From positions 186,001 to 250,000 of IMG/VR virus record IMGVR_UViG_3300042010_000106: a stretch of DNA of 64,000 nucleotides. One strand, given 5' to 3'. Position numbers and translations under genes: made by a program. Below are positions 473 to 14,287 of this stretch, piece by piece. The notes below the pieces were generated by a model. The model made no database searches. It worked only from the letters and a program-made list of their open reading frames with translations, and was not told the origin of the DNA. Every line of letters starts with the position of its first letter. The first letter of the stretch is position 1.

Positions 473-732
473 CGGGCTTCACCTTGTCGATTCATACGGC
501 CCAACCAATTCGATTTGGACACGTGCATTTTGTCGATGTAATCGTGAGGCATTGTCGCCCCTTGATCTTGAACCTGTGATTCGTTGGCAAGCAGGCTTTT
601 CTTCTTTGACCGTGGAATGTCACCGATCAATTCGTCATCGTCTGCCCAGCGTGCAATACGGGCGCCGCCGCGTTGGTCACTGTCGGTACTCTTTGATTCA
701 CGGCCTTGGATTTTAAGCGAGATTTTTGCCAT
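469..732 (-). CDS. hypothetical protein
   Basis: 87-aa ORF, ATGA overlap with downstream gene. Confidence 0.55.
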   Translation of the reverse strand: MAKISLKIQGRESKSTDSDQRGGARIARWADDDELIGDIPRSKKKSLLANESQVQDQGATMPHDYIDKMHVSKSNWLGRMNRQGEAR

Positions 733-738
733 TTGTTT

Positions 739-969
739 TTACTGGAAGCGCACGGTATCCACTATATCAATCCGCGTACGTTCCGCTCCTTTCGTATTGG
801 TGTCGATAATTCCCTTACGTTTCCGTTTGGGGATTTTCTTTGTCTTTTTGCCTTTCGTTTTGTAAACAGGTGGCTTACCTTCTTTCGCATTGTCGAAACT
901 GATATAGGGCAATGCGTCCCAACGGTCAGCACTTCGACTAGTACGAGCCAATGACAATTCAATTTCCAT
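739..969 (-). CDS. small basic hypothetical protein with shared N-terminal tag (MEIELSLAR)
   Basis: 76-aa ORF, K/R-rich C-terminal half. Confidence 0.6.
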   Translation of the reverse strand: MEIELSLARTSRSADRWDALPYISFDNAKEGKPPVYKTKGKKTKKIPKRKRKGIIDTNTKGAERTRIDIVDTVRFQ

Positions 970-995
970 TTGCGTTCCTCTGCTACAAAATTACG

Positions 996-1023
996 AAAAG
1001 AGCGGGGTTTTTAGGCCCCGCCC
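996..1023 (-). terminator. rho-independent terminator
   Basis: Minus strand GGGCGGGG-loop-CCCCGCTC followed by TTTT, just after the stop of 1030..3762. Confidence 0.7.
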
Positions 1024-1029
1024 ATTCGC

Positions 1030-3762
1030 TTAGTTGTAGCCTGCTGTATTGCGGTACTCTTCTGCGTTCTCAATCAAACCACGCAAAAGATCCGCAATGT
1101 TCTGCCCACTGTTCGCGAGGTTGTCTTCGTAATCTTCCAATTCATCTTCAGGGAAGTTATCGAAGAACTGACGCAAATCAGCCAGTTGTGAATCATCATC
1201 GTAACCAATCATCGACAGAATTTCTTCTGCAACCCGAACGATTTTGCTATTCAAATCAACCTTGGCATAGTTGCGATCTTCAATGATCTTTTTCGCTTCG
1301 TCTAAAACTTCAGCGTATTGTTCATCGTAGTTGTCGTCATCTGGATTGAGTGCAACACCCATTTCCTCGGTGTAAACCAATTCGCGGGCGGCTTCGTCTT
1401 CGTCCTGTGTTTCTTCGACTTCCAAAGATTCACAATAGTTTTCGAATTGCGTAATGGCTGTGCCCAGCATTGGCAACGACTTGATTGTACGAATGATTTG
1501 ACGATTGGAACGCGCCACTTCTTTCATACTGAAACGCGAAAATGCCAAGGTGTCTTCTTCCATACCACTGGCGTTTGCTGCATCTACGAGCAGGGGCAAG
1601 ATCGAAAGCATTTCAACTTTACGTGCGTTTTCATCCGTGCCGAAAACTACGTGACCGAACAGTTTGCCGAGTGGTGGGAAATCGTGTTCCTTATTCTCGT
1701 TGTACCATTCGTAGAACGCATCGTTATCCATGTCTTCCAGCGCGACTTTATGGCTGAGTGTCATTGGTGGATCGAGCAAGCGCCCGGTTGCCACACAAAG
1801 ACGCAGAACCAATTCAATAAAATCGTTTTCGTCTGGATCAATTGGATCGCCTTTCCATTCGTTAAGCTTGTCTGCAATGAATGGAACCATGTCGCTCAAG
1901 TTATTCGCAACGCTAGGCACGTTACGGTTTACGTACTTGAGCAAAGGCAGATGGAAGTGCGCCAGCATTTTGATGTTCCAATGCGTCCAGCGAGTCGAAT
2001 CAAAGTTCTCAGGCTCTGCTTCCATGTAATCAATAATGGCCTGCTTAATATCCTTGTACATATCCTGATTGGCAGCGTTTTGCATGCACTGTTGAAACGC
2101 CAACAGTTTTATGTGATCCATGAAAAAGCGCGTGCTGTTATTTTTCAAACGTTCCATCGCTTTGAATGGGCGACGTTTGCAAACCACTGGTGCCGCTTCT
2201 TCTACCGGTATTGCGAACACGGCGTCGGATTCCAGATACGAATCATCGTTATCCAGCAGCAAACACAGTGCAAGGCCAACGGTGGATGGGCCAACGTGCA
2301 TGCCTTCTTCTACAATGTCGGCATTGATTGTTTTCTCAGTGCCTTCAAGAAGCGCAACCAAATCATGCACTTGTTTTTCGAAATCTTTCACACCGAACAA
2401 CGGCATGTAACGTGCTGCACTTGCCATTGTGTATATCCACGATTTAACACGCGGACAATCTACAAACGTGTTTTCATCAGGCAGCGGATATGTACCATCC
2501 ATCAAGCCTGCAACCAATTCACGCATGCGGGAAACATTGTGTTCCTGTTCCATTCGCAGAACGTATTCACGCAGTACAGGCAAGCCGCTTTGTGCAAAAC
2601 GCCCGTGCAAACTTGGCGGGAATTCTTTGTAAGCAGACAACCGATCCTTGTTACCGAAGTCTTCCAAGAATCCAGCAGCACGACCAATCTGTGCAACAAC
2701 AGGATTCAATTTACCCATGGAAATTTGATTGGCGTATTCTTCCGCAAGTTTCGGACTGCCTTTCATCATTTCAGTCAGGGCTTTGATATCTTCGTCATGC
2801 AATGTGTCGGCAAAGCGAGCGATGTTCGCAATGATTGCACCTGATTCATCTGCGCCTTCGTCCATGCGTTGTTTTACGTACGGGACAATCAGCGATGGAT
2901 CTTCTGCAACGTCGTCCTGTGTGATTTCGCTGGTTTCACTGTCATTAACGCGATGGTGATGCGACGTACCGGCCCCGTCGTTGTAAAGGCCGCTGACAAC
3001 TTCGTAAAAACCTTCTGGAACGTGGGCGTTAATCTTGCGCAGGAAAGTATTCAACGTCTGTGAGAAACCGGGCACAGGGTTGCCGTAAACCCGCGTCTCA
3101 CGACGATACAAAACGTCACCGTCTTCGTTCACAAATGGTTTGACCAGACAGCGGCACAAAGGCTTCTGAATGTTCGTATCATCTGCACGAATTGCGTAGA
3201 CAACCAATGTACCTTCAGCAACGTCATTTTTCACGTGCTTGTTGTATTGCCCGTTGTCGTAACCTTCGCGGAAATCTTTCAAACGCATGCAGCTTTGATT
3301 GTCCCAATTACGGCCCGTAGACATACCAATAATGTCGTACGGATGGCAGGAAACAACCACTTGAATTCCGCTTTTATGGGGATCGCCACCAGTGGCTTTT
3401 GAGTTCTGCAATTGCGGGTCATTGTCGAACGCTGTTTTAGCGTGCACGTCTTTCGCAATTACTTTGCCAATGTTGAAAACGTTTTTCTGTTCTTTGTCAC
3501 TGGCTTTAACGCATTTCTTCGCCAGATAATCAGTGATGATATACCCGGCTTTCTGCACAGCCACACGAACAGCGGGCGGCACGGTGAAACGCATTTTCAT
3601 TTGCTTACCCGGTTCCAAATACAACCGGTAGCCTTTCTTTTTACCACCTTGCGGCATGAGACTTTGCAGAAGCTTTACAGCGGGGCCATTCTTGTTCCAG
3701 TCCCGACGATACTTCAACGCAGTCCGCATACTCACAGCGGCCAAGCTCATTTCGAGATTCAT
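1030..3762 (-). CDS. large hypothetical protein (paralog of 4016..6643), N-terminal tag MNLEMSLAA, acidic C-terminus
   Basis: 910 aa; first ~270 aa highly similar to the neighbour (TDYLAKKCVK..DKEQKNVFNIGKVI, SCHPYDIIGMSTGR.WD.QSCMRL, DVAEGTLV, YGNPVPGF). Confidence 0.8.
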   Translation of the reverse strand: MNLEMSLAAVSMRTALKYRRDWNKNGPAVKLLQSLMPQGGKKKGYRLYLEPGKQMKMRFTVPPAVRVAVQKAGYIITDYLAKKCVKASDKEQKNVFNIGKVIAKDVHAKTAFDNDPQLQNSKATGGDPHKSGIQVVVSCHPYDIIGMSTGRNWDNQSCMRLKDFREGYDNGQYNKHVKNDVAEGTLVVYAIRADDTNIQKPLCRCLVKPFVNEDGDVLYRRETRVYGNPVPGFSQTLNTFLRKINAHVPEGFYEVVSGLYNDGAGTSHHHRVNDSETSEITQDDVAEDPSLIVPYVKQRMDEGADESGAIIANIARFADTLHDEDIKALTEMMKGSPKLAEEYANQISMGKLNPVVAQIGRAAGFLEDFGNKDRLSAYKEFPPSLHGRFAQSGLPVLREYVLRMEQEHNVSRMRELVAGLMDGTYPLPDENTFVDCPRVKSWIYTMASAARYMPLFGVKDFEKQVHDLVALLEGTEKTINADIVEEGMHVGPSTVGLALCLLLDNDDSYLESDAVFAIPVEEAAPVVCKRRPFKAMERLKNNSTRFFMDHIKLLAFQQCMQNAANQDMYKDIKQAIIDYMEAEPENFDSTRWTHWNIKMLAHFHLPLLKYVNRNVPSVANNLSDMVPFIADKLNEWKGDPIDPDENDFIELVLRLCVATGRLLDPPMTLSHKVALEDMDNDAFYEWYNENKEHDFPPLGKLFGHVVFGTDENARKVEMLSILPLLVDAANASGMEEDTLAFSRFSMKEVARSNRQIIRTIKSLPMLGTAITQFENYCESLEVEETQDEDEAARELVYTEEMGVALNPDDDNYDEQYAEVLDEAKKIIEDRNYAKVDLNSKIVRVAEEILSMIGYDDDSQLADLRQFFDNFPEDELEDYEDNLANSGQNIADLLRGLIENAEEYRNTAGYN

Positions 3763-3774
3763 ATTGTGTTGTCC

Positions 3775-4011
3775 TTAGTGCGAGTACACACGCAAATCGA
3801 CATGATTACCTTTGAGGCTGTCGAGAACGGCGCTAAGCAATTCCATTTCCGCTGTCATGCGTTGCTTCATTGCAACCATTTGAGGATTGCCACCTTCCAT
3901 TGTGACCACGCTCATACGCACGCGTTTCAATGCGGCTTCAACCAGCTTTGCACATTCTTTTGCATCGCTGACTTTGATTTGTGCTGCTGCTGTTGCGAGT
4001 TCAATGTTCAT
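3775..4011 (-). CDS. small helical hypothetical protein with N-terminal tag (MNIELATAAA)
   Basis: 78-aa ORF filling the gap between the two large paralogs. Confidence 0.65.
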   Translation of the reverse strand: MNIELATAAAQIKVSDAKECAKLVEAALKRVRMSVVTMEGGNPQMVAMKQRMTAEMELLSAVLDSLKGNHVDLRVYSH

Positions 4012-4015
4012 AGAA

Positions 4016-6643
4016 TTAACTCAGTAAGTCGTCGAGAAGGGAATCGTCTTCGGCATTGATTTGGTCAGCAGTTTTCACGATGCGTTTGATCGAATCCAGT
4101 GTTTCCACTGCTTTCTCCGCTGCCTTTTTAATCTGGTAGAAAACGCCGCTAACACTGAACGCGTCTTTCTTAACCTGTTCATCGGTGTAGGCTTCAAGCC
4201 ATTCGACGTAGGGTTTCCAGTAATGCTCGCCGCCTGTTTCGTCTTCAGGGAAAGTTTCAACAAATTCCTGCAAGCGTGCCAAGTAGTTTTCACAGTCACG
4301 CAGAATTGCTTCCGGTTTATATTCCAAACGGGATTCAGGATCAGCAAAGAACACACGGCCAGCGCTATCTGCTGCTGTGAATTTCGAAGGCGCCCCGGCT
4401 GCACTGGCAAACGCTTGATACGTTCCAGAGTTGTACAGAATCGAGCCAAGCAACTGGCAGAATTCTTTAGGCGTTGGACTCTTCTTTTCCATGACTTGGA
4501 TGTAACGGAAACCACGATCATTACCCAAGAATTCATCAGGCGAAAGTGATTGTGCGTTACGCATGGTCAGCAGCATCGGGTATTTGATCAAGTCAATATT
4601 GGAGCTTTGCAGATTGGCTTTTTCCAGTGCACGCAAGGTATCGAACGAATCGAATTCAAACGTGAAATGTTCCGGTGCGTTTTTCTGAACCATTGCAACG
4701 GTGCCCAACATGTTCCAAAGGATTTGCTGGTCTGGATTACGTGCAACGTGCGAACCGGTAAGCTTTGCAAGTGCTGGCGCAATTTCGTCACCTTGTGGCA
4801 ACAGAATCGACAACATGTAACCGTCAACTTCCGGCGTGTGGGCTTCGATCATCGGGAACAATTCAGGCTTGTTGATCAACAGGCTAGGAAGTTCGTAGAA
4901 ATCGTCAACCATAATGCCACTGGATTGCACAGCCGCCATCAAATCACGTTGTGTGGAATTGTCACCTTTGTTGAAGGCAAGAATATTCATCACAGCGCCG
5001 GTCACGTATTGCTGAATGCGCTCAGGGAATCCTTGGCCTACCAATTTACGGCGCCATTTGCGGAATTCCAACAGCTTGTTAAAACTGGATTGTTGAATCA
5101 AATCCTCGGCCACGGTTTCCGCTTGGGAAACGCGATTATCACGCAGCAATTGCAGCATCCACGTACAGAAGATTTCAGGATCGTTTACGGTGTTCTGCAT
5201 CAGGATCATAAGCGGGCGGAAATCATCTTCGCTAATGCCCGGTTTTTCTGGTGCAGGAAGTTTACCCAATGCGGCATGCACGCTGTCTTGGAAATCATTC
5301 ACACCAAACATTGCTGCTTCACGATAAATGTTCAACACTTCCCAAATCATTTTGTGCAGGTTCGGGCGAGCGACAATATCTTTCGTGTTCAGGCTGATTC
5401 GACCGCGTACGTAATCCAGTGCAGTGCTAGACCAATCGGCATTATCGTCGTCCACGCCTTCCAGCAATTTGCTAGCGCCTTTCGGATCAACGTGAGACAT
5501 CGCACGTGAATTATGCACGTTGTAATCCGGCATCGCTTTGTGTACAGCGCGGGCCAGACGTTTGCTGGCGAGGAAACGACCTACACCATTCGCGTTACCG
5601 TGTTTAATCCCGTCTGCAAATGCTGCAACAGCTTCAGGATTATCGGCGATCAAACGTGCACCGATTTTGATGTTACGGGAATCGACATTCTTCGCATTGT
5701 TTCGCAGGAGCATCATTTGCTCACTGGCGCGATTCAGGTCTTTGCTCAAATCTTTGATTACGTACGAAACATAATCGGGGAATTCTTCTGGACTGGTCGC
5801 CAAATATTCGTGGATTTTAACCAAGCGCGACCAATTGGTGCCGCTGCTATTGCCCGATTCTTTCAAGGCAGTGCGGCCCACACCATCGTCATACAAACCC
5901 GACGACATTTCATACATTCCGTCTGGCACATTCTTATTCAGTTTGCGCAGGAATTTATTCAACGAGTCAGTAAAGCCGGGAACTGGATTGCCGTAAATCT
6001 TGAGTTCACGACGATACATCACGTCGCCTTTCTCACTGATAAACGGCTTCAACAGGCAGCGGCCTAACGGTGTGGTGATATTGCTGTCGCCACTTTTAAC
6101 CGCGTACGCAACTAAGGTGCCTTCTGCAACGTCGTTGTCTAGCTTGTCTGCGTTAATACCGTCGTCCATACCACCACGGCCATCGCGCAGGCGCATGCAG
6201 GATTGTGCATCCCAATCGCGCCCGGTACTCATGCCGATAATGTCATACGGGTGACACGACACAACCATTTCGAATTTGGCAGATTTCGAATTCTGCAATT
6301 GTGGATCGTTATCGAATGCTGCTTTTGCAATGTGATCTTTGCCAATCACTTTGCCGATATTGAAAACGTTCTTCTGTTCTTTATCGCCGACCTTTACGCA
6401 TTTCTTTGCAAGATAATCGGTGGCTACGTAGCCCGCTTTCGTGAGTGCATGCCGTACAGCCGCTGGAATCTTTACGCTGTGCGTTCCCAACGTGCCGCCG
6501 ATGGGAAAGTAAAGGCGATAACCGCGATTGTTCCCACGTGGCATAAGTTTCTGCAACAGCTTTACGGTCGGGCTTTTCTTGTCCCAATTGCGCCTGTATT
6601 TCAAAGCGCTTTTCATACTCACGGCAGCAATTGCGATTTCCAT
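4016..6643 (-). CDS. large hypothetical protein (paralog of 1030..3762), N-terminal tag MEIAIAA
   Basis: 875 aa; shared N-terminal domain, divergent C-terminal region that looks helical. Confidence 0.8.
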   Translation of the reverse strand: MEIAIAAVSMKSALKYRRNWDKKSPTVKLLQKLMPRGNNRGYRLYFPIGGTLGTHSVKIPAAVRHALTKAGYVATDYLAKKCVKVGDKEQKNVFNIGKVIGKDHIAKAAFDNDPQLQNSKSAKFEMVVSCHPYDIIGMSTGRDWDAQSCMRLRDGRGGMDDGINADKLDNDVAEGTLVAYAVKSGDSNITTPLGRCLLKPFISEKGDVMYRRELKIYGNPVPGFTDSLNKFLRKLNKNVPDGMYEMSSGLYDDGVGRTALKESGNSSGTNWSRLVKIHEYLATSPEEFPDYVSYVIKDLSKDLNRASEQMMLLRNNAKNVDSRNIKIGARLIADNPEAVAAFADGIKHGNANGVGRFLASKRLARAVHKAMPDYNVHNSRAMSHVDPKGASKLLEGVDDDNADWSSTALDYVRGRISLNTKDIVARPNLHKMIWEVLNIYREAAMFGVNDFQDSVHAALGKLPAPEKPGISEDDFRPLMILMQNTVNDPEIFCTWMLQLLRDNRVSQAETVAEDLIQQSSFNKLLEFRKWRRKLVGQGFPERIQQYVTGAVMNILAFNKGDNSTQRDLMAAVQSSGIMVDDFYELPSLLINKPELFPMIEAHTPEVDGYMLSILLPQGDEIAPALAKLTGSHVARNPDQQILWNMLGTVAMVQKNAPEHFTFEFDSFDTLRALEKANLQSSNIDLIKYPMLLTMRNAQSLSPDEFLGNDRGFRYIQVMEKKSPTPKEFCQLLGSILYNSGTYQAFASAAGAPSKFTAADSAGRVFFADPESRLEYKPEAILRDCENYLARLQEFVETFPEDETGGEHYWKPYVEWLEAYTDEQVKKDAFSVSGVFYQIKKAAEKAVETLDSIKRIVKTADQINAEDDSLLDDLLS

Positions 6644-6645
6644 GT

Positions 6646-7038
6646 TTATTCCTCGAAGGACTTGGCTGGTTTATACACCATCAACAAGCTGCCCCATTCT
6701 TCTTTGAAAAGCTTGAGTGTTTCTTGCATCGTCGCGTCCAATTTCAGCGCCGGACGGAAACCATTTTTGTAGAAGGTATGCAGACTGGCGACACTGGAAA
6801 CTTGACCGCCAATATCTGATTTGTATTTGCTCACAATGCCGCGCAGCAATTGATTACCGTAGCCTTGCCCGCGTTTGTCTTCGTCAATAACGAAATCAGT
6901 TACGCTGTGTTTGCATGGCGAATACTTCCCGCCAGTCTTCACGCAGATGTAACCATGGGCGCTACGGTATTCGGTGCCGAAGTGTTCATCGCGTTCTGTG
7001 ATTTTGATTGACGCTGCGACAGCCATTTCTACTTTCAT
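6646..7038 (-). CDS. GNAT-family acetyltransferase with N-terminal tag (MKVEMAVAAS)
   Basis: Acetyl-CoA motif A: FVIDEDKRGQGYGNQLL; motif B-like FYKNGF. Confidence 0.8.
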   Translation of the reverse strand: MKVEMAVAASIKITERDEHFGTEYRSAHGYICVKTGGKYSPCKHSVTDFVIDEDKRGQGYGNQLLRGIVSKYKSDIGGQVSSVASLHTFYKNGFRPALKLDATMQETLKLFKEEWGSLLMVYKPAKSFEE

Positions 7039-7545
7039 TTATTCGCCTATTCCTAATCCGACTGGATCGAAAGCGCCACTGTTACCAATTGCCGATTTGA
7101 TTTGCGAGGGATGAAAAACAATCCATTGCGGATGCGTACCGCCCACGTCGTAATGGTTCAGCAGCAACACACCATCACAACCTTTGCGCAAAGCTTCACG
7201 AATTACATCGGCGCGGCCTTCTTTGCCACCGTGGAAATCGTGCGTGTGCAATTTGTTGATTTTCAAATAGCACGGCAGCACGTGACCAATCACAGGCGAT
7301 GGAAAGTTTTCGTCGTAGCCTGCATAACGACCGGCAGTTTCTGCATCACTGGTAAAGAAAATACCGGATTCGCCTTCTGCTTTATTCAGGTGCGTCATGA
7401 AAGCGTGAAAGGATGGTTTGTTTGTGCCGTGATAAACACGCAAAGGTTTCCCGTGCGCGTCCACACATTTCGAATGACCAAACCACGCTTTAAACGCTGG
7501 GGTTTCTTGTTGCTTGGCAGTCGCTAAAGCGAGTTGGATTTTCAT
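7039..7545 (-). CDS. ADP-ribosyltransferase-like (ART-PolyVal type) protein with N-terminal tag (MKIQLALATA)
   Basis: TPAFKAWFGHSKCVDAHGKPLRVYHGT, GIFFTSD, DGVLL, WIVFHPSQIKSAIGNSGAFDP match recalled polyvalent-protein ART-like domain. Confidence 0.7.
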   Translation of the reverse strand: MKIQLALATAKQQETPAFKAWFGHSKCVDAHGKPLRVYHGTNKPSFHAFMTHLNKAEGESGIFFTSDAETAGRYAGYDENFPSPVIGHVLPCYLKINKLHTHDFHGGKEGRADVIREALRKGCDGVLLLNHYDVGGTHPQWIVFHPSQIKSAIGNSGAFDPVGLGIGE

Positions 7546-7817
7546 TTATTCACGACAACAGCTTCGTTGCTGTCCCATTCGTAACGAGTGGTGATTTCTT
7601 TTTCTTCACCGTTGGCACCAGTCAGATACAGAGTGAAATCAATTTTATCGAGTTGTTCTGTGTACTGATTGATGTTGTTGCGAATTGCTTCCTGCTTATC
7701 ACCTTTGCCGCGAGACAAAACAGGATTGCCGTGTTTCACATCACGGATTTCATAACCGCGAATTTTGAAACCACGTGGTGCCATATTTGCAGCAGCAACA
7801 GCCAATTGAATTTGCAT
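7542..7817 (-). CDS. hypothetical protein with N-terminal tag (MQIQLAVAAA)
   Basis: 91-aa ORF, overlaps downstream start. Confidence 0.65.
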   Translation of the reverse strand: MQIQLAVAAANMAPRGFKIRGYEIRDVKHGNPVLSRGKGDKQEAIRNNINQYTEQLDKIDFTLYLTGANGEEKEITTRYEWDSNEAVVVNK

Positions 7818-7822
7818 TGTGT

Positions 7823-8368
7823 TTAAACCTTTGCGTTCTGTTCAGGGCGGGCATTGATCGCAGCAGCGAAGGCCGCGTATGCCTCTGTGTGGTAGTCGGT
7901 GGCGCTGGCGGTCGCTACCTGCACCGTCATGGCCCCTGTCAGAGCCTCTACAGCGCTCGCCACGGCTTTAAAGTCGCGTGCCAGTGCCCGAACCTCACCC
8001 GCTGGCAGGAAATCGACTGCGGCGGGCCGGGAGACGTCCTGTACGGCCACGTCTTCGCGGCTCTTCACCATGATGCTATCCACGCACCGGGCAGGCAGCG
8101 CTTCGTAATACGCAAACGAACCATCGTGATTCGGCGTCATTAACGCAAGGTCATAAGTCACTTTGCAATCGCTGAATGCAACGCCAACAATCTTTGCAGG
8201 AATTGCGTAAGTGTTTGCTTCTGCCAACGTTAGGTTTTCAATCGCTGGATGGAAATAAACCTCTTCTTCCATTTTATAACGACTTGGGAAATGTTGCCCG
8301 ATACTGGAAAGCTCGACGTTCATTGTTTTAGGCCCTATAGAAACAGAGAAAGGGCGACATATAGTCAC
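7823..8368 (-). CDS. hypothetical protein (no tag)
   Basis: 181-aa ORF; 3' half noticeably GC-richer; start uncertain. Confidence 0.55.
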   Translation of the reverse strand: MTICRPFSVSIGPKTMNVELSSIGQHFPSRYKMEEEVYFHPAIENLTLAEANTYAIPAKIVGVAFSDCKVTYDLALMTPNHDGSFAYYEALPARCVDSIMVKSREDVAVQDVSRPAAVDFLPAGEVRALARDFKAVASAVEALTGAMTVQVATASATDYHTEAYAAFAAAINARPEQNAKV

Positions 8369-8386
8369 CCTTCCTTTAAATTACTG

Positions 8387-8851
8387 CTATTTGTGCAAAT
8401 GAATCTGCGATACGTCCATTGGAACATACGCAATTTCAGCGTCTTTGAATCGTTCGTGGATTGCATGCAGATTTGATTCATACACGGCAATGCCATCGTA
8501 ATGCGGCGCAGGGTATTCAGGCACACTCAAATAGGCCCACAATTCGTCGGCAAAGTTCATGTGCACAGGATCGCCCAGCTTGATTGGTTTAGCGGAACGC
8601 GTATTCAATTCATGCGGAACGAAATAGGTGTTGTAAATCTCTACTGCGCGCTTGTCCGTTCGGGTATCGAATAGACGTTTGATATCCACGTGCGCTTTCA
8701 TGATTATGTGCCCGTATTCCTTTGCGTAATCAATTGACGCCGAAAAGAACGCAGGCCGGTATTCAGAAAACTTTGTGAACTTCTTTTTGGTGCCATGAAA
8801 CAAAAGGTCAGGCACTTTCGATGTGCTGGCAATAGCCAGTTCAATCTTCAC
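8387..8851 (-). CDS. second ADP-ribosyltransferase-like protein with N-terminal tag (MKIELAIAS)
   Basis: LFHGT...AFFSASIDYAKEYG...YDGI pattern as in 7039..7545; GTG start at 8851 forms GTGA overlap with upstream stop. Confidence 0.6.
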   Translation of the reverse strand: MKIELAIASTSKVPDLLFHGTKKKFTKFSEYRPAFFSASIDYAKEYGHIIMKAHVDIKRLFDTRTDKRAVEIYNTYFVPHELNTRSAKPIKLGDPVHMNFADELWAYLSVPEYPAPHYDGIAVYESNLHAIHERFKDAEIAYVPMDVSQIHLHK

Positions 8852-9030
8852 GCGGCGCACTTCATTGTGCGGGCCAATTCAGGATATTCCTGTTCGAATT
8901 TGCGCCAGCTTTCAAGCATACGTGCGGTACGCTCTTTGTTCTCTGCGTAAATGCGATCCTTTTCTTCTTGCGGCAATGCGTCGAATTCAGCGCGAATTCT
9001 TTTTAGGTCGAATTTGTGTGCGTGGAGCAT
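8848..9030 (-). CDS. small charged hypothetical protein
   Basis: 60-aa ORF, stop overlaps next start. Confidence 0.5.
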   Translation of the reverse strand: MLHAHKFDLKRIRAEFDALPQEEKDRIYAENKERTARMLESWRKFEQEYPELARTMKCAA

Positions 9031-9232
9031 TTGAGCGTCCTTTCTTTTGTTTGAGATATGGGCGATTCAATTGTGGGCGAAACCCCGGTGGCCCTGCTTG
9101 ACCACGGCAACCACCAGCGCCGTCGTTCCAATCCTCTCCCGGTAGCCCTTCGTCTCCCAATGGGCCGTGTTCACCACGACAGCCAACTGAAAGGCCCAAT
9201 AGTGCAACTGCTAACGCCAATGAGTTACGCAT
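8987..9232 (-). CDS. putative small lipoprotein with Gly-X-Y repeats
   Basis: Signal peptide with lipobox-like LSVG-C; GEHGPLGDEGLPG and GQAGPPG collagen-like triplets. Confidence 0.55.
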   Translation of the reverse strand: MRNSLALAVALLGLSVGCRGEHGPLGDEGLPGEDWNDGAGGCRGQAGPPGFRPQLNRPYLKQKKGRSNAPRTQIRPKKNSR

Positions 9233-9628
9233 TTAATCACCATTTAAAATCACTGGCGGGCACCCAATGCACGCGCCCATTTGCAGAACGGAATCGAGGA
9301 AATAAATGTTGTTTGTGAAGCTGTCATTCTGCTGTGTGGCCCAACCGAACGTATTACCGGCAGCGGTCTTTTCACCCGTCACCGCATCCACACCGGCTGT
9401 TTCCACGTAGGCGCTGTATTCGTAGAATTTGCCACCGCTGAAACCGTAAGCCATCACATTCACACGCGCTTTGAATTCACCAGTTGTGATGTCCTCATAA
9501 CACTTGAACATTTTGACACTGGTTGCATCAGGATCACCCGGTTCAAAAGAGAAGCCACGCGATTCAAGCTTTTCTATGAACTGTGCGGCTTCGGTTGGAC
9601 TGGCAGCGACTGCTAATTGAATTTCCAT
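9233..9628 (-). CDS. hypothetical protein with N-terminal tag (MEIQLAVAAS)
   Basis: 131-aa ORF, coupled to upstream stop. Confidence 0.65.
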   Translation of the reverse strand: MEIQLAVAASPTEAAQFIEKLESRGFSFEPGDPDATSVKMFKCYEDITTGEFKARVNVMAYGFSGGKFYEYSAYVETAGVDAVTGEKTAAGNTFGWATQQNDSFTNNIYFLDSVLQMGACIGCPPVILNGD

Positions 9629-11301
9629 TAATCACCTTTCGTTGCCAGATCCATTGCTTTCTGAATCTTGCTATTTGGACGGGTATTCGTTTTCGCAAAT
9701 ACAGGCTCGAAAACAGACGGGTCGATGTAGTTCGCAATTGCCGTGGTGGCCGTCACGTTCTCGCCGCTCATATGTCCGAGTTCTTTACCGATGTTCAGGC
9801 ATTGCTTTTCAATCCACGCATTCACGTCTGCATCTTTCGCACGGGCACCGAACGGACATTTCGCCATCAGAACCATTGCCATTCCAGTACCACGCAATTT
9901 GCGGAATTTGTGAATGGTGAAGCCTTCAGGGAAACCGAGTTCGCGCAGGTATCCGTTGATGTTCGAATTGCTGATTGGTTTGCCACGGAACGTGAACACG
10001 TATTCACCGGGCTTTTTGTCAAAGCAGAATTCGTTGATGGATTCCTTGAGCATTTCGGTACGCTGCTCGTTGAATTTGATTACGTGTTTCTGTGCACCGC
10101 CTTTCTTCCCGGCGTACTTCATAATCACGCGTGTTTCATTCAAATTCAGATGCTTACGCAGCAGTGTGGAAATGCCGTAAGTGGTTTCGCCAGCGGTATT
10201 GGCTTTGGTTGAACCGATACGTGCACTGGTCTGATAAATCACTTCGCAAATTGCAGCAGCCGTACCTTTCAGTGTACCGGGGCCTTTGCCCAAATCCACC
10301 AGCCATTTCTTTGTCCACTTCGGCAAATCAGGAAGCATGCCCTGAATAATGCTGAAACTTTCAACACGACCTTCGGTACGCGATTTGATCGTCTGCACAT
10401 TCGTGAAATTGGCAGCAAACGGCGCCTTGTATTTGCACACATAGGCGTTGTCATCGTCGGGCCGGTATTTCGGATTCATTTCACCAATGCCAATTGGTTT
10501 GTTCAGCAATTGCAAACCGGCTTCTGTGTAGAAATTCCCTTTGTCGTCCATCTTGCCGACGAACCATTCAGGGATATCGTGCTGCACATTGGCTAAGCGC
10601 TCACGAATTACAACCACGTCCAAAAGGTGTTCCCCGGACTGGCGCACGACGTTGGCAATTGCTTTGTCATACACCGCTTTCCGTTGCCTGCGCATATCCA
10701 AATATTCTTGGTGTTGCGGCAGGTTAGAACCGAGTTCCTTTGCTTTCTCACGCCATGCTGTCAGCGTGGTTTCAGGCATCACGTTACCGCTGACTTTCCC
10801 GTGTGTTTTCACATGGTTAGCGAGCCGATCGTACAGCGCGGTTTGACTACTGGTTTGAACCTCTTCCCCTTCGTGCATAAACATTTTGCTGATATGCGAA
10901 TCTTTGAACAGACCCGCATTCTGCATCAAACGTTTGTTAGCACTTTCCGAACCATTCCGCGCCAGACGAATATCGTTGAACAAAGAAAGCTGCACTTTGT
11001 TCAGGCTGGTGTCTTTCTCGAACGCTTTCTTTTTCTCTTTCAGTTTGAGGAAACACGCGTCCATAAGCAGCGTGTATTTGTGGTCTGCAACGTCGTGCCC
11101 TTCGACCATTAATGCAATAGGCTTTTTGAATACGCGAGCAATCTGGAATTGATCAAGGAAAGGCTGCGCAGTGTGCGCCCACGTCTTGAGCTTTTTCAGA
11201 AAGTCTGTGCCGAAGTCGTATTCTGGCGCTTTCAAGAAGGCAATCAAAATCTTTAGGAAAGCGTCGGCACTGCCCGGTGCAGCGGCCAAAGAGATTTGCA
11301 T
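9628..11301 (-). CDS. type IB DNA topoisomerase with N-terminal tag (MQISLAAA)
   Basis: TopIB catalytic-domain motifs in order: SARIGS..TYGISTL..H, YAGKKG, FTIHKFRKLRGT, LGH, NYIDP (R,K,R,H,Y pentad apparently intact). Confidence 0.8.
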   Translation of the reverse strand: MQISLAAAPGSADAFLKILIAFLKAPEYDFGTDFLKKLKTWAHTAQPFLDQFQIARVFKKPIALMVEGHDVADHKYTLLMDACFLKLKEKKKAFEKDTSLNKVQLSLFNDIRLARNGSESANKRLMQNAGLFKDSHISKMFMHEGEEVQTSSQTALYDRLANHVKTHGKVSGNVMPETTLTAWREKAKELGSNLPQHQEYLDMRRQRKAVYDKAIANVVRQSGEHLLDVVVIRERLANVQHDIPEWFVGKMDDKGNFYTEAGLQLLNKPIGIGEMNPKYRPDDDNAYVCKYKAPFAANFTNVQTIKSRTEGRVESFSIIQGMLPDLPKWTKKWLVDLGKGPGTLKGTAAAICEVIYQTSARIGSTKANTAGETTYGISTLLRKHLNLNETRVIMKYAGKKGGAQKHVIKFNEQRTEMLKESINEFCFDKKPGEYVFTFRGKPISNSNINGYLRELGFPEGFTIHKFRKLRGTGMAMVLMAKCPFGARAKDADVNAWIEKQCLNIGKELGHMSGENVTATTAIANYIDPSVFEPVFAKTNTRPNSKIQKAMDLATKGD

Positions 11302-11302
11302 T

Positions 11303-11752
11303 TCATCGCTCCATATTTTTCAGGACGTAATCCATCCGCTCAAATTTAATGGCGTATTTCCGAGACTTGATGTCCTCGGCTGGAATACGGATACCCACGT
11401 AATAGCACGTGTGGTTCAAACGTTCTTTTGCGTCTTCGACAATTCGATTGTTATCGTCGAGGCACATCAGCACGGTATCAATGTAATCGCGTTTGCCATC
11501 AAGGCGAACTTTGTAGCCGTAGCACAATGTGTAATTGTGTTTCTCGGCGAAGGCAATAAACAAATCAACATTGTCCGGGTTCGGAATGTCGTCTGTGAAA
11601 TGCCCACGCTTCATTAGCGGCATTTGAATCAAACGCTGTCCGAGGTCACGCCACGTTGGCCGACTAACAGTCAGCCGTGTGATTACAGGCTTCGGTATGT
11701 AGTTCTTTACAGTGTTTAGAACGGCGCTTGCGCAACTGATAATAATCTTCAT
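11303..11752 (-). CDS. hypothetical protein with N-terminal tag (MKIIISCASA)
   Basis: 149-aa ORF coupled to tmk stop. Confidence 0.6.
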   Translation of the reverse strand: MKIIISCASAVLNTVKNYIPKPVITRLTVSRPTWRDLGQRLIQMPLMKRGHFTDDIPNPDNVDLFIAFAEKHNYTLCYGYKVRLDGKRDYIDTVLMCLDDNNRIVEDAKERLNHTCYYVGIRIPAEDIKSRKYAIKFERMDYVLKNMER

Positions 11753-12375
11753 TAGGGGATTCCGTAGAGTCGATCCAGTGCAGCGAAAATGTCTTGTTTT
11801 ACTTTCTCAATGGATTGCGATGCGTCGATGGTAATCCACGAATCTTTCTTGTCCGCAATGCGCTGGTACGTGGTGCGACACATGTTCAAATATGCGTGGC
11901 CGCGCTGTTCAATCTTGTCGAGTGCAACGCCTTTATCCACGCGGGATTTGATCATGCGTTCGACACTCAATTCGGCGGTAATGTCGAGGAAAATTGTCAG
12001 GTCTGGTTCGACAATGTACGGCACACTCAATTCGTGCACGGCCATAATCTCAGGGCAATTCTGATACACCCACGACGAAGCGTAATAACGTTCACTGAAA
12101 ACATGAATGCCTTCAGCCATCTTCGGACGGATTACGTGTTTCGTGTGGTCAATGCGACCGGCGTACGCACAAAGCGCTTCGGCCTGCACAGGCGGATCAA
12201 ATTCATCACTGATTACCAAACGACGGCAGATTTCAGCGAAAGGAGTTCCGCCAATTTCACGCGTCAAATAGAAAGGCAGTGCACGCGATTGGTAATACTC
12301 AGGCATGTATTCCGACACAGTGCCTTTGCCGCATGCTTCGATACCTTCCAGAACTGCAAATTTCCCATACGCCAT
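11752..12375 (-). CDS. tmk: thymidylate kinase
   Basis: P-loop VLEGIEACGKGT, TREIGGT, ERYYASSWVYQ, EPDLTIFLDI. Confidence 0.9.
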   Translation of the reverse strand: MAYGKFAVLEGIEACGKGTVSEYMPEYYQSRALPFYLTREIGGTPFAEICRRLVISDEFDPPVQAEALCAYAGRIDHTKHVIRPKMAEGIHVFSERYYASSWVYQNCPEIMAVHELSVPYIVEPDLTIFLDITAELSVERMIKSRVDKGVALDKIEQRGHAYLNMCRTTYQRIADKKDSWITIDASQSIEKVKQDIFAALDRLYGIP

Positions 12376-12944
12376 TATAAATACACCCGCTGTACTTGCA
12401 TTACATTACGCTTGGAGTCACCACCACGCCAAGCAAGTTTTTTGTATATCTGGTGTTTGCGTGTGATCGCCAAGGGACGACGTTTCGCACGCACTGCACA
12501 CCGAATTAATCCCGTGGTTTCACTGAGGGTCAAGATCCCGGCACCCTCTGCCACAATTTCAGCTTTGATTTCTGGATAGCAACGCGATTTCATAATCGAC
12601 GGCGGAAACACAAAGAACAATTGAGTTGTGTGACTCAAATATTCCCGCCATTTCTTATCGCTACGGTAATCAGCCAAACAGCTTTTGATTTCCACACCGA
12701 CAATGTTGCCCACAAAATCCATTGCCATAACGTCCAAACGGCGAGCGCCCCAACGCTCTACGCCCACTTCCCTGTGAACGCTGTATGTTTTCTTCGCCCA
12801 ATAATACACAGCCGCTTGATGCAATTTCTCTGTGATTAATTTGCGTCCTGTTAACGAAGTGTCATCAATGTTCACAGGTTTCGGTGCTGGGGTTGCACGG
12901 GGTTTTCTTTTTCCCCGTGGTCTAGATCGCCGTTTGTACGCCAT
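12375..12944 (-). CDS. mmcB: MmcB-family PD-(D/E)XK DNA repair nuclease with basic N-terminal extension
   Basis: RRLDVMA..GVEIKSCLADYRSDKKWREYL..LFFVFP. Confidence 0.75.
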   Translation of the reverse strand: MAYKRRSRPRGKRKPRATPAPKPVNIDDTSLTGRKLITEKLHQAAVYYWAKKTYSVHREVGVERWGARRLDVMAMDFVGNIVGVEIKSCLADYRSDKKWREYLSHTTQLFFVFPPSIMKSRCYPEIKAEIVAEGAGILTLSETTGLIRCAVRAKRRPLAITRKHQIYKKLAWRGGDSKRNVMQVQRVYL

Positions 12945-12946
12945 GT

Positions 12947-14287
12947 TTAACGCAGTCCCATCAGTTTCATGTAAGGAGTCAACACACCGTTACCGTCGTG
13001 CATTTTCAGGTATTCCGAAACGGCCTTTTGATACACGGCCATCGGTTGGCGCTGGTCATACGCACCTTTGAAATCCTGAATTGCGTTCATGATATCGGCA
13101 TCGGTAGCACCACCACGGCGCGTACGGTTGATCAACGACTTCAAGCGTGTTTCGGTATCCTTGTTCAGCAAACGAACTGGAAACAGTTTCCAGCGGCTGA
13201 AAAGAACACTTCGATCTTTTGTGTATTTCTTCATTGCAGTGCAGAACTTGTCGAACGGCAGCGCGTATATGTCCGGCGCGTCCGTGTATTCAGGCAGTGC
13301 AACCGAAATGCTCGGCGTGTTATAGGCTTCGCCCAGCACTTTTGCATCTTTGTAGTTGTAATTGCCAACGAACATCTTTTTCAAACTGGCATCGGTAAAC
13401 GCTTTGGTACTCTTCAGGTTTGTACCCTGCGTAACAACACGTTCTTTCGTCGTAATCAATTTGACGACCATTGCTTCGTGCGGAAAAGCCTCTTTCAATT
13501 TGGCTGCACACGTTTGCAAATCGTCTTCAGTGATTACCTTGTGCGTGTACCAAGACGACCAGTGCATCAAGGCGCCGGGAACACCGCGCTCTGCAATAAT
13601 TGCGTAAAACTCTTCGGTTGCATCACGCGCAATTTCTTCGTGCGTACCGGCCAGAATGATGTGGAAACCGAAGGTGTTAATCCTGTGCATTTCCGATTGA
13701 AACAGCGGGCCGTGGTTTGCGTGGATCAATGCCATAGCACGTTCTGGATCGGTCGGAAGTTTTTCAACACCTTTCACGTAGTTGTACAGGTGAATCATTT
13801 CGTGAATGATTGTGTTCGTGAAAAGCACACGGTCAATCATCGAACTTTCATTCACATGCAGAGTAAACAACGCTTTCCGATTCGGTGCCGTGGCAGAAGG
13901 CGACCATTTCATTTCGGCCATGCCCCACACGCCTGCTTTACGTGCTTTTACAATTTTCACAGGCGGGCATGCACCGTTGAAATACAGCTTATTGTAATAG
14001 TCGTAAAGAGGTTTGACCATTTCGATTTTCGGTTCAAACAAAAGGTACGGCGCATTGGTTGGATCGGGACGCACGGTCAAACGTTCTTCGCTCATTTTCA
14101 TAAGCGCGTTGCCTTCTTTCTTGGTCAGGCTGAACAGAATTTCCGGGTTGTGTTCATGAATCACGACATATTTGGTGCCGTGCAAATACATTTCGAATTG
14201 ATCGCCCATAACGAACGTCAAATAGTAATCAGGATGCGCGTCGTCGTATTGCACGTCAGCTTTGTTGATAAAACGATAGGTACTCAT
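12947..14287 (-). CDS. SprT-like zinc metalloprotease with extra N-terminal domain
   Basis: YDYYNKLYFNG, TIIHEMIHL (HEXXH), HGPLFQSEMHRIN. Confidence 0.8.
   Translation of the reverse strand: MSTYRFINKADVQYDDAHPDYYLTFVMGDQFEMYLHGTKYVVIHEHNPEILFSLTKKEGNALMKMSEERLTVRPDPTNAPYLLFEPKIEMVKPLYDYYNKLYFNGACPPVKIVKARKAGVWGMAEMKWSPSATAPNRKALFTLHVNESSMIDRVLFTNTIIHEMIHLYNYVKGVEKLPTDPERAMALIHANHGPLFQSEMHRINTFGFHIILAGTHEEIARDATEEFYAIIAERGVPGALMHWSSWYTHKVITEDDLQTCAAKLKEAFPHEAMVVKLITTKERVVTQGTNLKSTKAFTDASLKKMFVGNYNYKDAKVLGEAYNTPSISVALPEYTDAPDIYALPFDKFCTAMKKYTKDRSVLFSRWKLFPVRLLNKDTETRLKSLINRTRRGGATDADIMNAIQDFKGAYDQRQPMAVYQKAVSEYLKMHDGNGVLTPYMKLMGLR

What the first reader, a model, noticed from the sequence alone, without database searches (positions are those of the whole stretch)
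9628..11301. Type IB topoisomerase carrying the putative packaging tag
Seen: apparently intact TopIB R-K-R-H-Y pentad, a ~300-aa N-terminal extension and the MQISLAAA tag, in a genome that also encodes a type IIA topoisomerase. Established: TopIB is uncommon in tailed phages, and poxvirus TopIB is virion-encapsidated and supports early transcription. Inference: an injected topoisomerase that relaxes the incoming genome before phage gene expression, a functional parallel to poxviruses.
Basis: partly seen in the sequence, partly recalled or inferred. Interest (0 to 1): 0.6.

Follow-up and report, generated by a model that had tools for sequence, protein, structure and literature searches.

The report
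Jumbo-phage topoisomerase IB with head-targeting tag
A giant phage related to Pseudomonas phage Lu11 encodes a genuine, apparently active type IB topoisomerase whose first eight residues match a short motif that also marks a dozen neighbouring genes, the head scaffold and the capsid protein's predicted cutting site, so the enzyme is probably loaded into the capsid, though this is still only a prediction.

Summary
Window 9628..11301 (-) encodes a 557-aa protein that is a type IB topoisomerase by sequence and by fold. The pentad R361-K399-R467-H510-Y525 is invariant in 26 homologues. Integrases and telomere resolvases score clearly lower. The canonical two-domain TopIB is residues about 243-555. 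The extension is about 240 aa (not 300), all-helical, and shared by the whole jumbo-phage TopIB family, which the literature already notes. A type IIA topoisomerase lies at 59085..62773.

The tag is real and acts at peptide level. M-x-[IVL]-x-[LIM]-[AS]-x-A opens 12 minus-strand genes in the window (11 of them in one run, 164..11301). These include two ADP-ribosyltransferases, a GNAT and two ~900-aa proteins. Synonymous codons differ and the upstream DNA is unrelated.

New here:
- The tag core recurs 11 times inside the acidic scaffold-like protein, which is encoded between the head maturation protease and the capsid protein (0.5 copies expected).
- It also sits where cleavage would remove about 20% of the capsid protein, as measured for phage PaBG.

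So the tag most likely works like T4's capsid targeting sequence: head targeting plus a protease site. Packaging is plausible but indirect. Injection and relaxation of the incoming genome are untested.

The parts
9628..11301 (-). TopIB gene, 557 aa (P0001), 62.5 kDa, pI 9.4
   Evidence: Full-length match to PHROG 23460. 70% identical to Lu11 gp197.
11275..11301 (-). N-terminal tag MQISLAAAP (residues 1-9), followed by a short G/S/P/A linker of variable length in orthologues
   Evidence: Residues 1-10 are coil with low pLDDT in the AF2 model.
10582..11274 (-). Family-specific all-helical N-terminal domain (residues 10-240), function unknown
   Evidence: Helices H11-H235. No Pfam hit. Conserved in RSL1 and Motura TopIB. 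Only a weak language-model resemblance to Topoisom_I_N clusters, 0.84-0.86.
10366..10575 (-). TopIB N-terminal beta domain (residues about 243-312)
   Evidence: Variola TopIB 5..289 aligns to model 243..541, Z 15.8. Strands at 249-302.
9631..10365 (-). TopIB catalytic domain (residues about 313-557). Catalytic codons: R361 10219-10221, K399 10105-10107, R467 9901-9903, H510 9772-9774, Y525 9727-9729. H464 (9910-9912) sits at the position of vaccinia K220.
9233..9628 (-). Tagged gene (131 aa, MEIQLAVAAS), acidic, no family match
8387..8851 (-). Tagged gene (GTG start, MKIELAIAST), ART-PolyVal-like, homologue of Lu11_0205
7542..7817 (-). Tagged gene (91 aa, MQIQLAVAAA)
7039..7545 (-). Tagged gene (168 aa, MKIQLALATA), ADP-ribosyltransferase of the polyvalent-protein type
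   Evidence: PF18760 E 3.9e-20. Matches domains of 1664-aa and 2900-aa phage proteins.
6646..7038 (-). Tagged gene (130 aa, MKVEMAVAAS), GNAT-like acetyltransferase (just below the Pfam cut-offs)
4016..6643 (-). Tagged gene (875 aa, MEIAIAAVS), paralogue of 1030..3762, no family match
3775..4011 (-). Tagged gene (78 aa, MNIELATAAA)
1030..3762 (-). Tagged gene (910 aa, MNLEMSLAAV), homologue of Lu11_0207/0208
739..969 (-). Tagged gene (76 aa, MEIELSLART)
164..472 (-). Tagged gene (102 aa, MKIMLCLASE); compare Lu11_0198 MKIMLATAAE
20792..21346 (-). Outlying tagged gene (184 aa, MEISLAAPYG) between portal and large terminase. A relative (L014) has MEMFIALASP at the same place.
11303..14287 (-). 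Conserved upstream neighbours, tightly abutting or overlapping: a 149-aa ORF (MKIIISCASA, a doubtful tag), thymidylate kinase, MmcB-like nuclease and SprT-like/KMPT-N metalloprotease
17540..19465 (-). Portal protein, same strand, 6 kb upstream of TopIB (context: late/structural region)
   Evidence: phrog_16240 E 7e-247
59085..62773 (-). Two-subunit type IIA topoisomerase (GyrA/ParC-like 59085..60713; GyrB-like with Toprim 60713..62773), in the DNA-metabolism region

Best explanation
The gene encodes a catalytically competent type IB topoisomerase of the jumbo-phage-specific family. It has an approximately 240-aa helical N-terminal domain followed by the canonical TopIB clamp.

In the Lu11 lineage the gene sits downstream of the portal gene, on the same strand, among head and tail genes, and it has acquired a 7-9-residue N-terminal peptide, M-x-I-x-[LI]-A-x-A. 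That peptide is shared by about a dozen otherwise unrelated neighbouring genes (two ADP-ribosyltransferases, a GNAT, two ~900-aa proteins and small ORFs).

The peptide core, [LIVM]-[AS]-x-A-[ASTG], is also repeated 11 times in the acidic scaffold-like protein encoded between the head maturation protease and the major capsid protein. It also sits at the predicted cleavage site that removes the capsid protein's N-terminal ~71 residues.

Inferred mechanism, by analogy with the T4 capsid targeting sequence:
1. The tag brings the protein into the assembling prohead.
2. The maturation protease clips the tag off.
3. The trimmed enzyme stays in the DNA-filled head.
4. It leaves with the DNA at infection.
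5. As an enzyme that needs neither ATP nor Mg, it can relax supercoils at once, in the incoming 312-kb genome or in host DNA.

Shown: TopIB identity, the intact active site, the tag and its peptide-level conservation, and the motif shared with the scaffold-like and capsid proteins.
Inferred: protease cleavage at the motif, packaging, ejection, and the target of the relaxing activity.
For: TopIB:
- Pfam match above cut-off.
- Invariant pentad, aligned to solved TopIBs.
- AF2 model with pLDDT 84.
- Foldseek top 21 hits are all TopIB. VIA Z is 15-19 for TopIB and at most 13.3 for recombinases.

Tag:
- 12 genes carry it, with enrichment p = 8e-14.
- Synonymous codons differ and the upstream DNA is unrelated.
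- It is conserved on TopIB orthologues down to 45% identity, with a variable-length linker after it.
- It is present on the neighbours of TopIB in Lu11 and in two metagenomic relatives, where the consensus has drifted in parallel: MYISLASV with MKVFISLIG and MEVFLSLSD.
- 7 of the 11 tagged genes in the cluster have no BLASTP counterpart in Lu11's cluster, so the tag is portable.

Link to the head:
- 11 core motifs lie in the 628-aa protein at genome 5158..7044, against 0.54 +/- 0.73 expected from its own composition (0 of 5000 shuffles). Only this gene and its near neighbour at genome 8991..9527 have two or more internal copies.
- That protein lies between the head maturation protease (phrog_18299, 1e-96) and a virion structural protein plus the capsid protein.
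- Its Lu11 homologue has 8 copies at matching positions, at only 55-60% identity.
- The capsid protein motifs DEIAVA|N (window phage) and EEAVAA|A (PaBG) lie at aligned positions. Cutting there leaves 31.9 of 40.2 kDa (-20.6%), which matches the published ~20% loss on maturation of the PaBG capsid protein.
- PaBG gp83, the gene next to its TopIB and detected in virions, begins MLIKINLLEAVAAK.

Co-tagged cargo are effector-type enzymes (ART-PolyVal, GNAT), like T4 Alt. For T4 CTS and P1 DarB, N-terminal signals are sufficient for capsid loading (PMC3012670, PMC9024508).
Against: - No proteomic evidence that TopIB is in any virion. PaBG's 14-band MALDI list lacks gp84, although that method sees only abundant proteins and the PaBG tag is degenerate (MHTSLSAV).
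- Orthologues in RSL1 and Motura lack the tag and lie among nucleotide and DNA-metabolism genes, so the family's ancestral role is probably intracellular.
- The cleavage position and the protease specificity are inferred, not measured.
- An 8-residue PSSM of the full tag finds internal sites only at chance level. Only the 5-residue core is enriched.
- The protease-tag co-fold gave no verdict.
- The TopIB tag has Pro at the position after the motif (AAA|P), which many proteases disfavour.
Confidence: 0.55

Rival explanations
1. This is an intracellular TopIB only. The enzyme works in phage replication, transcription or recombination inside the infected cell, as presumably in RSL1 and Motura. 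The N-terminal peptide serves something other than capsid loading, for example translation initiation, stability or a degron, or assembly with a non-capsid partner.
For: Untagged orthologues lie in DNA-metabolism neighbourhoods. TopIB is absent from the PaBG virion band list. Thymidylate kinase and a nuclease are immediate neighbours.
Against: - The same core motif is repeated 11 times in the scaffold-like head protein and sits at the predicted capsid-protein maturation site.
- Codons and upstream DNA are not conserved, so an RNA-level or initiation signal is unlikely.
- The tag marks unrelated effector-type proteins in one hypervariable cluster next to portal and terminase.
Confidence: 0.25
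2. The enzyme is packaged, but its job is not to prime phage gene expression. Option (a): it is a host-takeover effector that relaxes the host chromosome alongside the co-tagged ADP-ribosyltransferases and acetyltransferase. Option (b): it acts on the phage DNA during packaging or ejection, or on the terminal repeats (end joining or recombination).
For: Co-tagged cargo are host-modifying enzyme types. The genome has direct terminal repeats. The protein is basic, pI 9.4, like DNA-associated internal proteins. From established knowledge, vaccinia TopIB can also resolve Holliday junctions.
Against: Nothing computed here discriminates between targets. This rival shares all the unproven packaging steps of the best explanation.
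Confidence: 0.15
3. It is a tyrosine recombinase, integrase or telomere resolvase rather than a topoisomerase.
For: A weak Phage_integrase Pfam hit (22.7 bits, below the 27.1 cut-off) and an integrase PHROG hit. The H464-x-x-R467 motif is recombinase-like.
Against: - TopIB structures fill the top 20-21 ranks. TelA has Z 7.3 and ResT Z 4.5.
- The variola-type N-terminal beta domain is present.
- The NYIDP tyrosine motif is of cellular TopIB type.
- The genome ends are direct repeats, not hairpins.
Confidence: 0.03

Closest known systems
Jumbo-phage TopIB family (Lu11 gp197, HRDY3, PaBG gp84, NCTB; more distantly RSL1 ORF108 and Motura)
   Same: Full-length orthologue: 70% identity to Lu11, 38% to PaBG, about 29% to RSL1 over residues 111-551. 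Same ~550-aa architecture with the helical N-terminal domain. Already noted as a phage-specific topoisomerase I (PMC7824862).
   Different: The tag and the position downstream of the portal are confined to the Lu11/PaBG lineage. RSL1 and Motura lack both. The tag itself is not mentioned in the papers I could search.
Poxvirus TopIB (vaccinia and variola; 1a41, 2h7f)
   Same: Same two-domain fold (variola 5..289 aligns to 243..541, Z 15.8) and the same R-K-R-H-Y chemistry.
   Different: Only 13-17% identity. An extra 240-aa helical domain. His at the position of vaccinia K220. Packaging here would go through a cleavable N-terminal peptide into a tailed-phage head and is unproven.
Cellular TopIB (Deinococcus 2f4q/3m4a; archaeal 6z01/6z03; human Top1)
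   Same: Best sequence and structure matches: profile E 1.4e-10 and 3.8e-10; Z 17-19 with 20-21% identity. The NYIDP tyrosine motif is as in archaeal and eukaryotic enzymes.
   Different: No detectable Topoisom_I_N cap by HMM. The language-model resemblance of residues 1-240 to that domain is only a lead.
T4 capsid targeting sequence on internal proteins IPI-III (and the packaged ADP-ribosyltransferase Alt)
   Same: A short N-terminal peptide shared by otherwise unrelated proteins of a hypervariable gene cluster. It contains the prohead-protease motif that also occurs in scaffold and capsid proteins. The cargo includes ADP-ribosyltransferases.
   Different: Unrelated sequence: an A-x-A type core instead of T4's L/I-x-E. 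A different phage lineage and protease family. Sufficiency for targeting and cleavage have not been tested. The cargo includes a topoisomerase.
P1 DarB N-terminal packaging signal; phiKZ and SPN3US inner-body/ejection proteins cut by the prohead protease
   Same: N-terminal signals or propeptides direct large enzymes into heads for delivery with the DNA (PMC9024508; PMC13282480).
   Different: The P1 signal is about 30 residues and is not a shared family tag. phiKZ-type propeptides are long and are cut at S/A/G-X-E. Here the tag is 7-9 residues and is shared by about 12 genes.

Membership tests
Type IB topoisomerase | Match to the catalytic-core profile above the curated threshold | tested here: met
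   PF01028 scores 48.1 bits against a 23.7 cut-off. Phage_integrase scores 22.7, below its 27.1 cut-off. All 31 homologues that carry a precomputed Pfam annotation have PF01028; one 315-aa fragment has none.
Type IB topoisomerase | Catalytic pentad Arg-Lys-Arg-His-Tyr | tested here: met
   R361, K399, R467, H510 and Y525 are invariant in 26 sequences. They align to the R, GK, FR, H and NYIDP of 6z01, and R/K/R align to 2f4q and 2h7f.
Type IB topoisomerase | Two-domain clamp (N-terminal beta domain plus catalytic domain), closer to TopIB than to tyrosine recombinases or resolvases | tested here: met
   Model pLDDT 84. Foldseek ranks 1-21 are all TopIB. VIA Z is 15-19 for TopIB, at most 13.3 for XerH and integrases, 7.3 for TelA and 4.5 for ResT.
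Type IB topoisomerase | Mg- and ATP-independent relaxation through a 3'-phosphotyrosyl intermediate | not testable with these tools
   Needs a relaxation assay with a Y525F control.
T4-like capsid targeting sequence (CTS) system | A short N-terminal peptide shared by several otherwise unrelated proteins, conserved at peptide rather than DNA level | tested here: met
   12 genes carry it. Codons differ and upstream DNA is unrelated. The bodies of the proteins have no mutual BLASTP similarity, except for the two large paralogues.
T4-like capsid targeting sequence (CTS) system | The peptide contains the head-maturation protease motif that also occurs in scaffold and capsid proteins | tested here: inconclusive
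   The motif is shared: 11 copies in the scaffold-like protein (0 of 5000 shuffles reach this), 8 conserved copies in Lu11, and the capsid-protein site fits PaBG's ~20% mass loss. That the protease cuts there is inferred. The co-fold gave no verdict.
T4-like capsid targeting sequence (CTS) system | Tagged proteins are present in virions with the tag removed, and the tag is sufficient to load a foreign protein | not testable with these tools
   The only indirect data come from PaBG. Its gp83, next to TopIB and starting ...LLEAVAAK, is a virion band, while gp84 (TopIB) is not listed.
Virion-packaged poxvirus-like topoisomerase (functional class) | Enzyme delivered with the genome and needed for efficient early transcription | not testable with these tools
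   No virion proteome, infection time course or mutant exists for this uncultivated phage. The Lu11 announcement was not retrievable.
Tyrosine recombinase / telomere resolvase | Best profile and fold matches to integrase, Xer or protelomerase | tested here: not met
   These rank below all TopIB entries. Only the HxxR motif (H464/R467) is recombinase-like.

The most novel reading that the evidence does not exclude
Lu11-group jumbo phages load a fast-changing set of enzymes into the capsid for delivery with the DNA. The loading signal is a 7-9-residue N-terminal peptide that doubles as the head-maturation protease site (A-x-A type core, also used to dismantle the scaffold and trim the capsid protein). 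The cargo includes a type IB topoisomerase, ADP-ribosyltransferases, an acetyltransferase and ~100-kDa proteins. This would be the first tailed phage known to carry a topoisomerase in its virion. It would be a convergent parallel to poxviruses, and the tag would be a compact, portable packaging signal for a new phage lineage.
Probability: 0.45. Interest if true: 0.7.

Novelty: new variant of a known kind. Interest (0 to 1): 0.55.

Why it matters
The enzyme itself is a new member of a family already annotated in Lu11, PaBG and RSL1. Two things are new and directly testable. First, a minimal N-terminal tag is shared with the scaffold and with the capsid protein's maturation site. Second, it implies that a topoisomerase is capsid cargo.

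If confirmed, this would:
- define the cleavage and targeting code of an unstudied head-maturation system;
- give a list of probable injected effectors for a whole jumbo-phage lineage;
- provide a very short portable tag for loading foreign proteins into large capsids;
- add a phage counterpart to the virion topoisomerase of poxviruses.

Lu11 (host Pseudomonas putida) and PaBG are cultivable, so one virion N-terminomics experiment would settle it.

Tried and rejected
- Single-sequence AF2 fold: pLDDT 41, unusable. Replaced by the alignment-based model.
- Complex prediction of the head maturation protease (residues 13-281) with TopIB residues 1-30: score 0.25, below the 0.34 mark. No verdict, so not used as evidence either way.
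- An 8-residue PSSM built from the tags: outside the training genes, hits at 11 bits or more (about 6) equal the shuffled expectation of 1-10. Only the 5-residue core is informative.
- The search for related loci in viral contigs found only Lu11 and a 19.5-kb fragment identical to the window over the part of TopIB it holds, residues 1-258.
- The record behind the divergent relative L012 is not held. I could therefore not test whether the scaffold and capsid-protein motifs co-vary with its drifted tags.
- PaBG virion protein gp83 has no homology to any tagged protein of Lu11, and no match in this genome. Only its N-terminal motif is comparable.
- T4-type prohead protease Pfam PF03420: no hit. 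The protease was found with PHROGs instead.
- Literature: no paper contains tag strings such as MKIQLAVA. There is no paper on HRDY3. The Lu11 genome announcement PMC3372202 is not held. The Matilda preprint does not mention a topoisomerase.
- P0008 residues 1-135 (the extra N-terminal part of the 687-aa fusion forms) are not homologous to the window's upstream ORF.
- Reads tools, the large representative-protein search and RNA tools were not used.
Full report
WHAT THE WINDOW IS

The window is bases 186001-250000 of a 312,325-bp virus record with direct terminal repeats, judged complete. Its nearest cultured relative is the jumbo Pseudomonas phage Lu11, which is 72.6% identical in DNA and 70% in protein over this gene. 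HRDY3 (69%), PaBG (38%) and NCTB (30%) follow.

Almost all genes of the window lie on the minus strand:
- Portal: 17540..19465.
- Large terminase, with an intein: 21362..24658.
- Replication and nucleotide-metabolism genes lie further up.
- A two-subunit type IIA topoisomerase: 59085..62773.

The ORF at 9628..11301 (-) gives 557 residues starting MQISLAAAPGS.

Sequence evidence:
- Pfam Topoisom_I is matched above its curated cut-off (48.1 against 23.7 bits). Phage_integrase stays below its own.
- A word search returned 32 homologues, all from metagenomes or phages. 31 carry PF01028; the exception is a 315-aa fragment with no annotation.
- In an alignment of 26 of them (30-92% identity), R361, K399, R467, H510 and Y525 are invariant.
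- A profile of that alignment hits archaeal TopIB 6z01 (E 1.4e-10), Deinococcus TopIB (3.8e-10) and variola and vaccinia TopIB. It places these residues on their catalytic Arg, Gly-Lys, Phe-Arg, His and the NY(I/L)DP tyrosine.

Structure evidence:
- With the alignment, AlphaFold2 gives a confident model (mean pLDDT 84).
- The best 21 Foldseek matches in the PDB are all TopIB.
- On re-alignment, TopIB chains score Z 15-19. The best tyrosine recombinase (XerH) scores 13.3, protelomerase TelA 7.3 and ResT 4.5.

One recombinase-like detail remains. The residue three positions before R467 is an invariant His (H464), where poxviral and cellular enzymes have Lys.

THE EXTENSION

Variola TopIB residues 5-289 align to model residues 243-541. 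The canonical enzyme is thus the C-terminal ~315 residues, and the extension is about 240 residues, not 300.

The extension is a stack of helices with no Pfam match. It is not peculiar to this phage. RSL1 and Motura TopIBs (559 and 541 aa) share it, including the first helix. A language-model search puts residues 1-240 nearest to Topoisom_I_N clusters, but at scores (0.84-0.86) that the tool rates as a lead only.

TopIB in Lu11, PaBG, NCTB, Motura and RSL1 is already mentioned by Iyer et al. 2021 (PMC7824862). In the phage collection only 21 of 50,697 records hold a relative, and all of those genomes are 193-314 kb.

THE TAG

The pattern M-x-[IVL]-x-[LIM]-[AS]-x-A opens eleven minus-strand genes in one run from 164 to 11301, plus one more gene (20792..21346) between portal and terminase.
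- In a crude gene call, 9 of 10 genes in the cluster interval carry it, against 7 loose matches among 426 others (p = 8e-14).
- The tags use different synonymous codons, and the DNA before the start codons is unrelated. Selection therefore acts on the peptide.
- In the model, residues 1-10 are unstructured.
- TopIB orthologues keep the tag down to 45% identity (MLISIAAS, MYVSFAAD, MYISLASV). After it comes an Ala/Pro/Ser/Gly linker of variable length.
- Lu11 has the tag on gp197 (TopIB) and on gp198, 200, 202 and 204-208.
- Two metagenomic relatives have it on TopIB and on downstream genes. In the more distant one the consensus has drifted in parallel on all of them.

Cargo:
- Tagged proteins include two ART-PolyVal ADP-ribosyltransferases, a GNAT-like acetyltransferase and two paralogous ~900-aa proteins.
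- Only TopIB, one ART and the large paralogues are shared with Lu11's cluster. Seven tagged genes here have no counterpart there.
- This is the behaviour of a portable address label on a hypervariable cargo set.

LINK TO THE HEAD (new in this analysis)

The head module lies elsewhere in the genome, in this order:
- 3346..4191: head maturation protease (phrog_18299, E 1e-96).
- 4730..5092: a small protein starting MKVFIALAAS.
- 5158..7044: a 628-aa acidic protein, the homologue of PaBG gp82.
- 7058..7795: a virion structural protein.
- 7839..8921: the major capsid protein.

Findings:
- The five-residue tag core [LIVM][AS][VILTA]A[ASTG] occurs 48 times in about 98,000 residues of the proteome. 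Eleven copies are in the 628-aa protein and eleven are the N-terminal tags.
- Shuffling that protein's own residues gives 0.54 +/- 0.73 copies, and 0 of 5000 shuffles reach 11. Only this gene and the 178-aa ORF just after the capsid gene have two or more internal copies.
- Lu11's homologue, only 55-60% identical, has eight copies at matching positions.
- The capsid protein has DEIAVA|NH at residues 67-72, and PaBG's has REEAVAA|AE at the aligned place. A cut there leaves 31.9 of 40.2 kDa, a 20.6% loss. The PaBG paper reports that its capsid protein loses about 20% on maturation and that several virion proteins are processed (PMC7412058).
- PaBG gp83 is encoded next to its TopIB and was identified in virions. 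It begins MLIKINLLEAVAAK. PaBG's SprT-like protein begins MELAIAS.

The most economical reading is that the core motif is the recognition site of the head maturation protease. That enzyme would dismantle the scaffold, trim the capsid protein and clip the tags. Because the motif sits at the extreme N-terminus of a dozen unrelated proteins, it probably also addresses them to the prohead.

This is how the T4 capsid targeting sequence works on internal proteins (PMC3012670). A comparable N-terminal signal loads DarB into P1 (PMC9024508).

HOW IT LIKELY WORKS, AND HOW SURE

TopIB identity and catalytic competence: about 0.95. The tag as a head-assembly and protease motif: about 0.65. TopIB actually packaged: about 0.55. 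Ejected enzyme relaxing the incoming genome before expression: about 0.3.

Points for packaging:
- The gene lies on the portal's strand, among head and tail genes. Its neighbours abut or overlap it.
- Terminator-like hairpins flank the run at 15685-15662 and 8375-8347 (weak evidence).
- The replication-associated type IIA enzyme lies 48 kb away.
- TopIB needs no cofactor, which suits a delivered enzyme.

Points against:
- No proteome shows TopIB in a virion. PaBG's 14-band list lacks it, but that method misses low-copy proteins.
- The untagged RSL1 and Motura orthologues sit among nucleotide-metabolism genes, so the ancestral role is probably intracellular.
- The TopIB tag is followed by Pro.
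- The protease-tag co-fold gave no verdict.

Even if the enzyme is packaged, its target could be the host chromosome (alongside the ARTs) or the phage DNA ends, rather than early transcription.

COMPARISON AND NOVELTY

As an enzyme it is a new member of the known jumbo-phage TopIB family. Its closest solved structures are cellular TopIBs (20-21% identity). The poxvirus enzyme has the same fold at 13-17% identity.

As a system, the tag resembles T4's CTS in logic but not in sequence, protease family or lineage. A topoisomerase as capsid cargo has, to my knowledge, not been described for a tailed phage. I found no mention of the tag in the searchable literature. I therefore rate it a new variant of a known kind, with moderate interest. 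The decisive test is one virion N-terminomics experiment on Lu11 or PaBG.

Noticed in passing
G000:C1:5158-7044 (+), outside the window (L007): A 628-aa acidic protein between the head maturation protease and the capsid protein carries 11 copies of the tag core (0.5 expected). It is probably the scaffold. PHROGs labels its family 'ATPase' and PaBG's record calls the homologue '60S ribosomal-like protein L2-A'; both labels look wrong.
   Followed up: yes
G000:C1:7839-8921 (+), outside the window (L007): The major capsid protein has DEIAVA|NH at residues 67-72. Cutting there removes about 20% of the mass, matching the published PaBG observation. This predicts the maturation cleavage site for the Lu11/PaBG group.
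   Followed up: partly
window 12947-14287 (-) and 12375-12944 (-): A SprT-like/KMPT-N metalloprotease and an MmcB-like nuclease are conserved just upstream of TopIB in Lu11, PaBG and two metagenomic relatives. SprT/Spartan/Wss1 proteases remove topoisomerase-DNA covalent adducts in eukaryotes, so a functional pairing with TopIB is conceivable. In PaBG this protein itself starts with the tag-like MELAIAS. RSL1 and Motura have no such neighbour.
   Followed up: partly
window 7039-7545 (-), 8387-8851 (-), 6646-7038 (-): Two tagged ADP-ribosyltransferases of the polyvalent-protein type and a tagged GNAT-like acetyltransferase. They are candidate injected host-modifying enzymes, reminiscent of T4 Alt.
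   Followed up: partly
window 1030-3762 (-) and 4016-6643 (-): Two tagged paralogues of 910 and 875 aa (43% identical to each other; homologues of Lu11_0207/0208) with no Pfam or PHROG match at all.
   Followed up: no
proteins P0004, P0008, P0009 (metagenomic relatives): TopIB forms of 683-687 aa in which a tagged ~127-aa N-terminal part is fused in frame to TopIB, and the TopIB tag (…NVSIAASPGS…) is kept internally. If the motif is a protease site, the fusion would be cut into two proteins. I did not check whether these are gene-call artefacts.
   Followed up: partly
window 21362-24658 (-): The large terminase is 1098 aa and contains an intein (Intein_splicing, E 1.2e-21). A relative's terminase also carries an intein with a LAGLIDADG domain.
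   Followed up: partly
window 9910-9912 (-), residue H464: An invariant His sits three residues before catalytic R467 (HxxR, as in tyrosine recombinases), where poxviral, bacterial, archaeal and human TopIB have Lys. This probably explains the weak integrase profile hits.
   Followed up: partly
window 8987-9232 (-): A small untagged ORF inside the tag cluster has a Gly-rich, collagen-like stretch (GEHGPLGDEGLPGEDWNDGAGG). It is shared with Lu11_0199.
   Followed up: no
window 11303-11752 (-): The ORF just upstream of TopIB starts MKIIISCASA (Lu11_0196: MKLYLTTASA). This may be a degenerate tag or chance.
   Followed up: no
window 16459-17235 (-) and 14739-15587 (-): A gp5-like baseplate hub/spike protein (Phage_base_V, Gp5_C) and a protein with a tail-fibre C-terminal (intramolecular chaperone-like) domain lie between portal and TopIB. 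The region therefore mixes head, tail and nucleic-acid enzymes.
   Followed up: no
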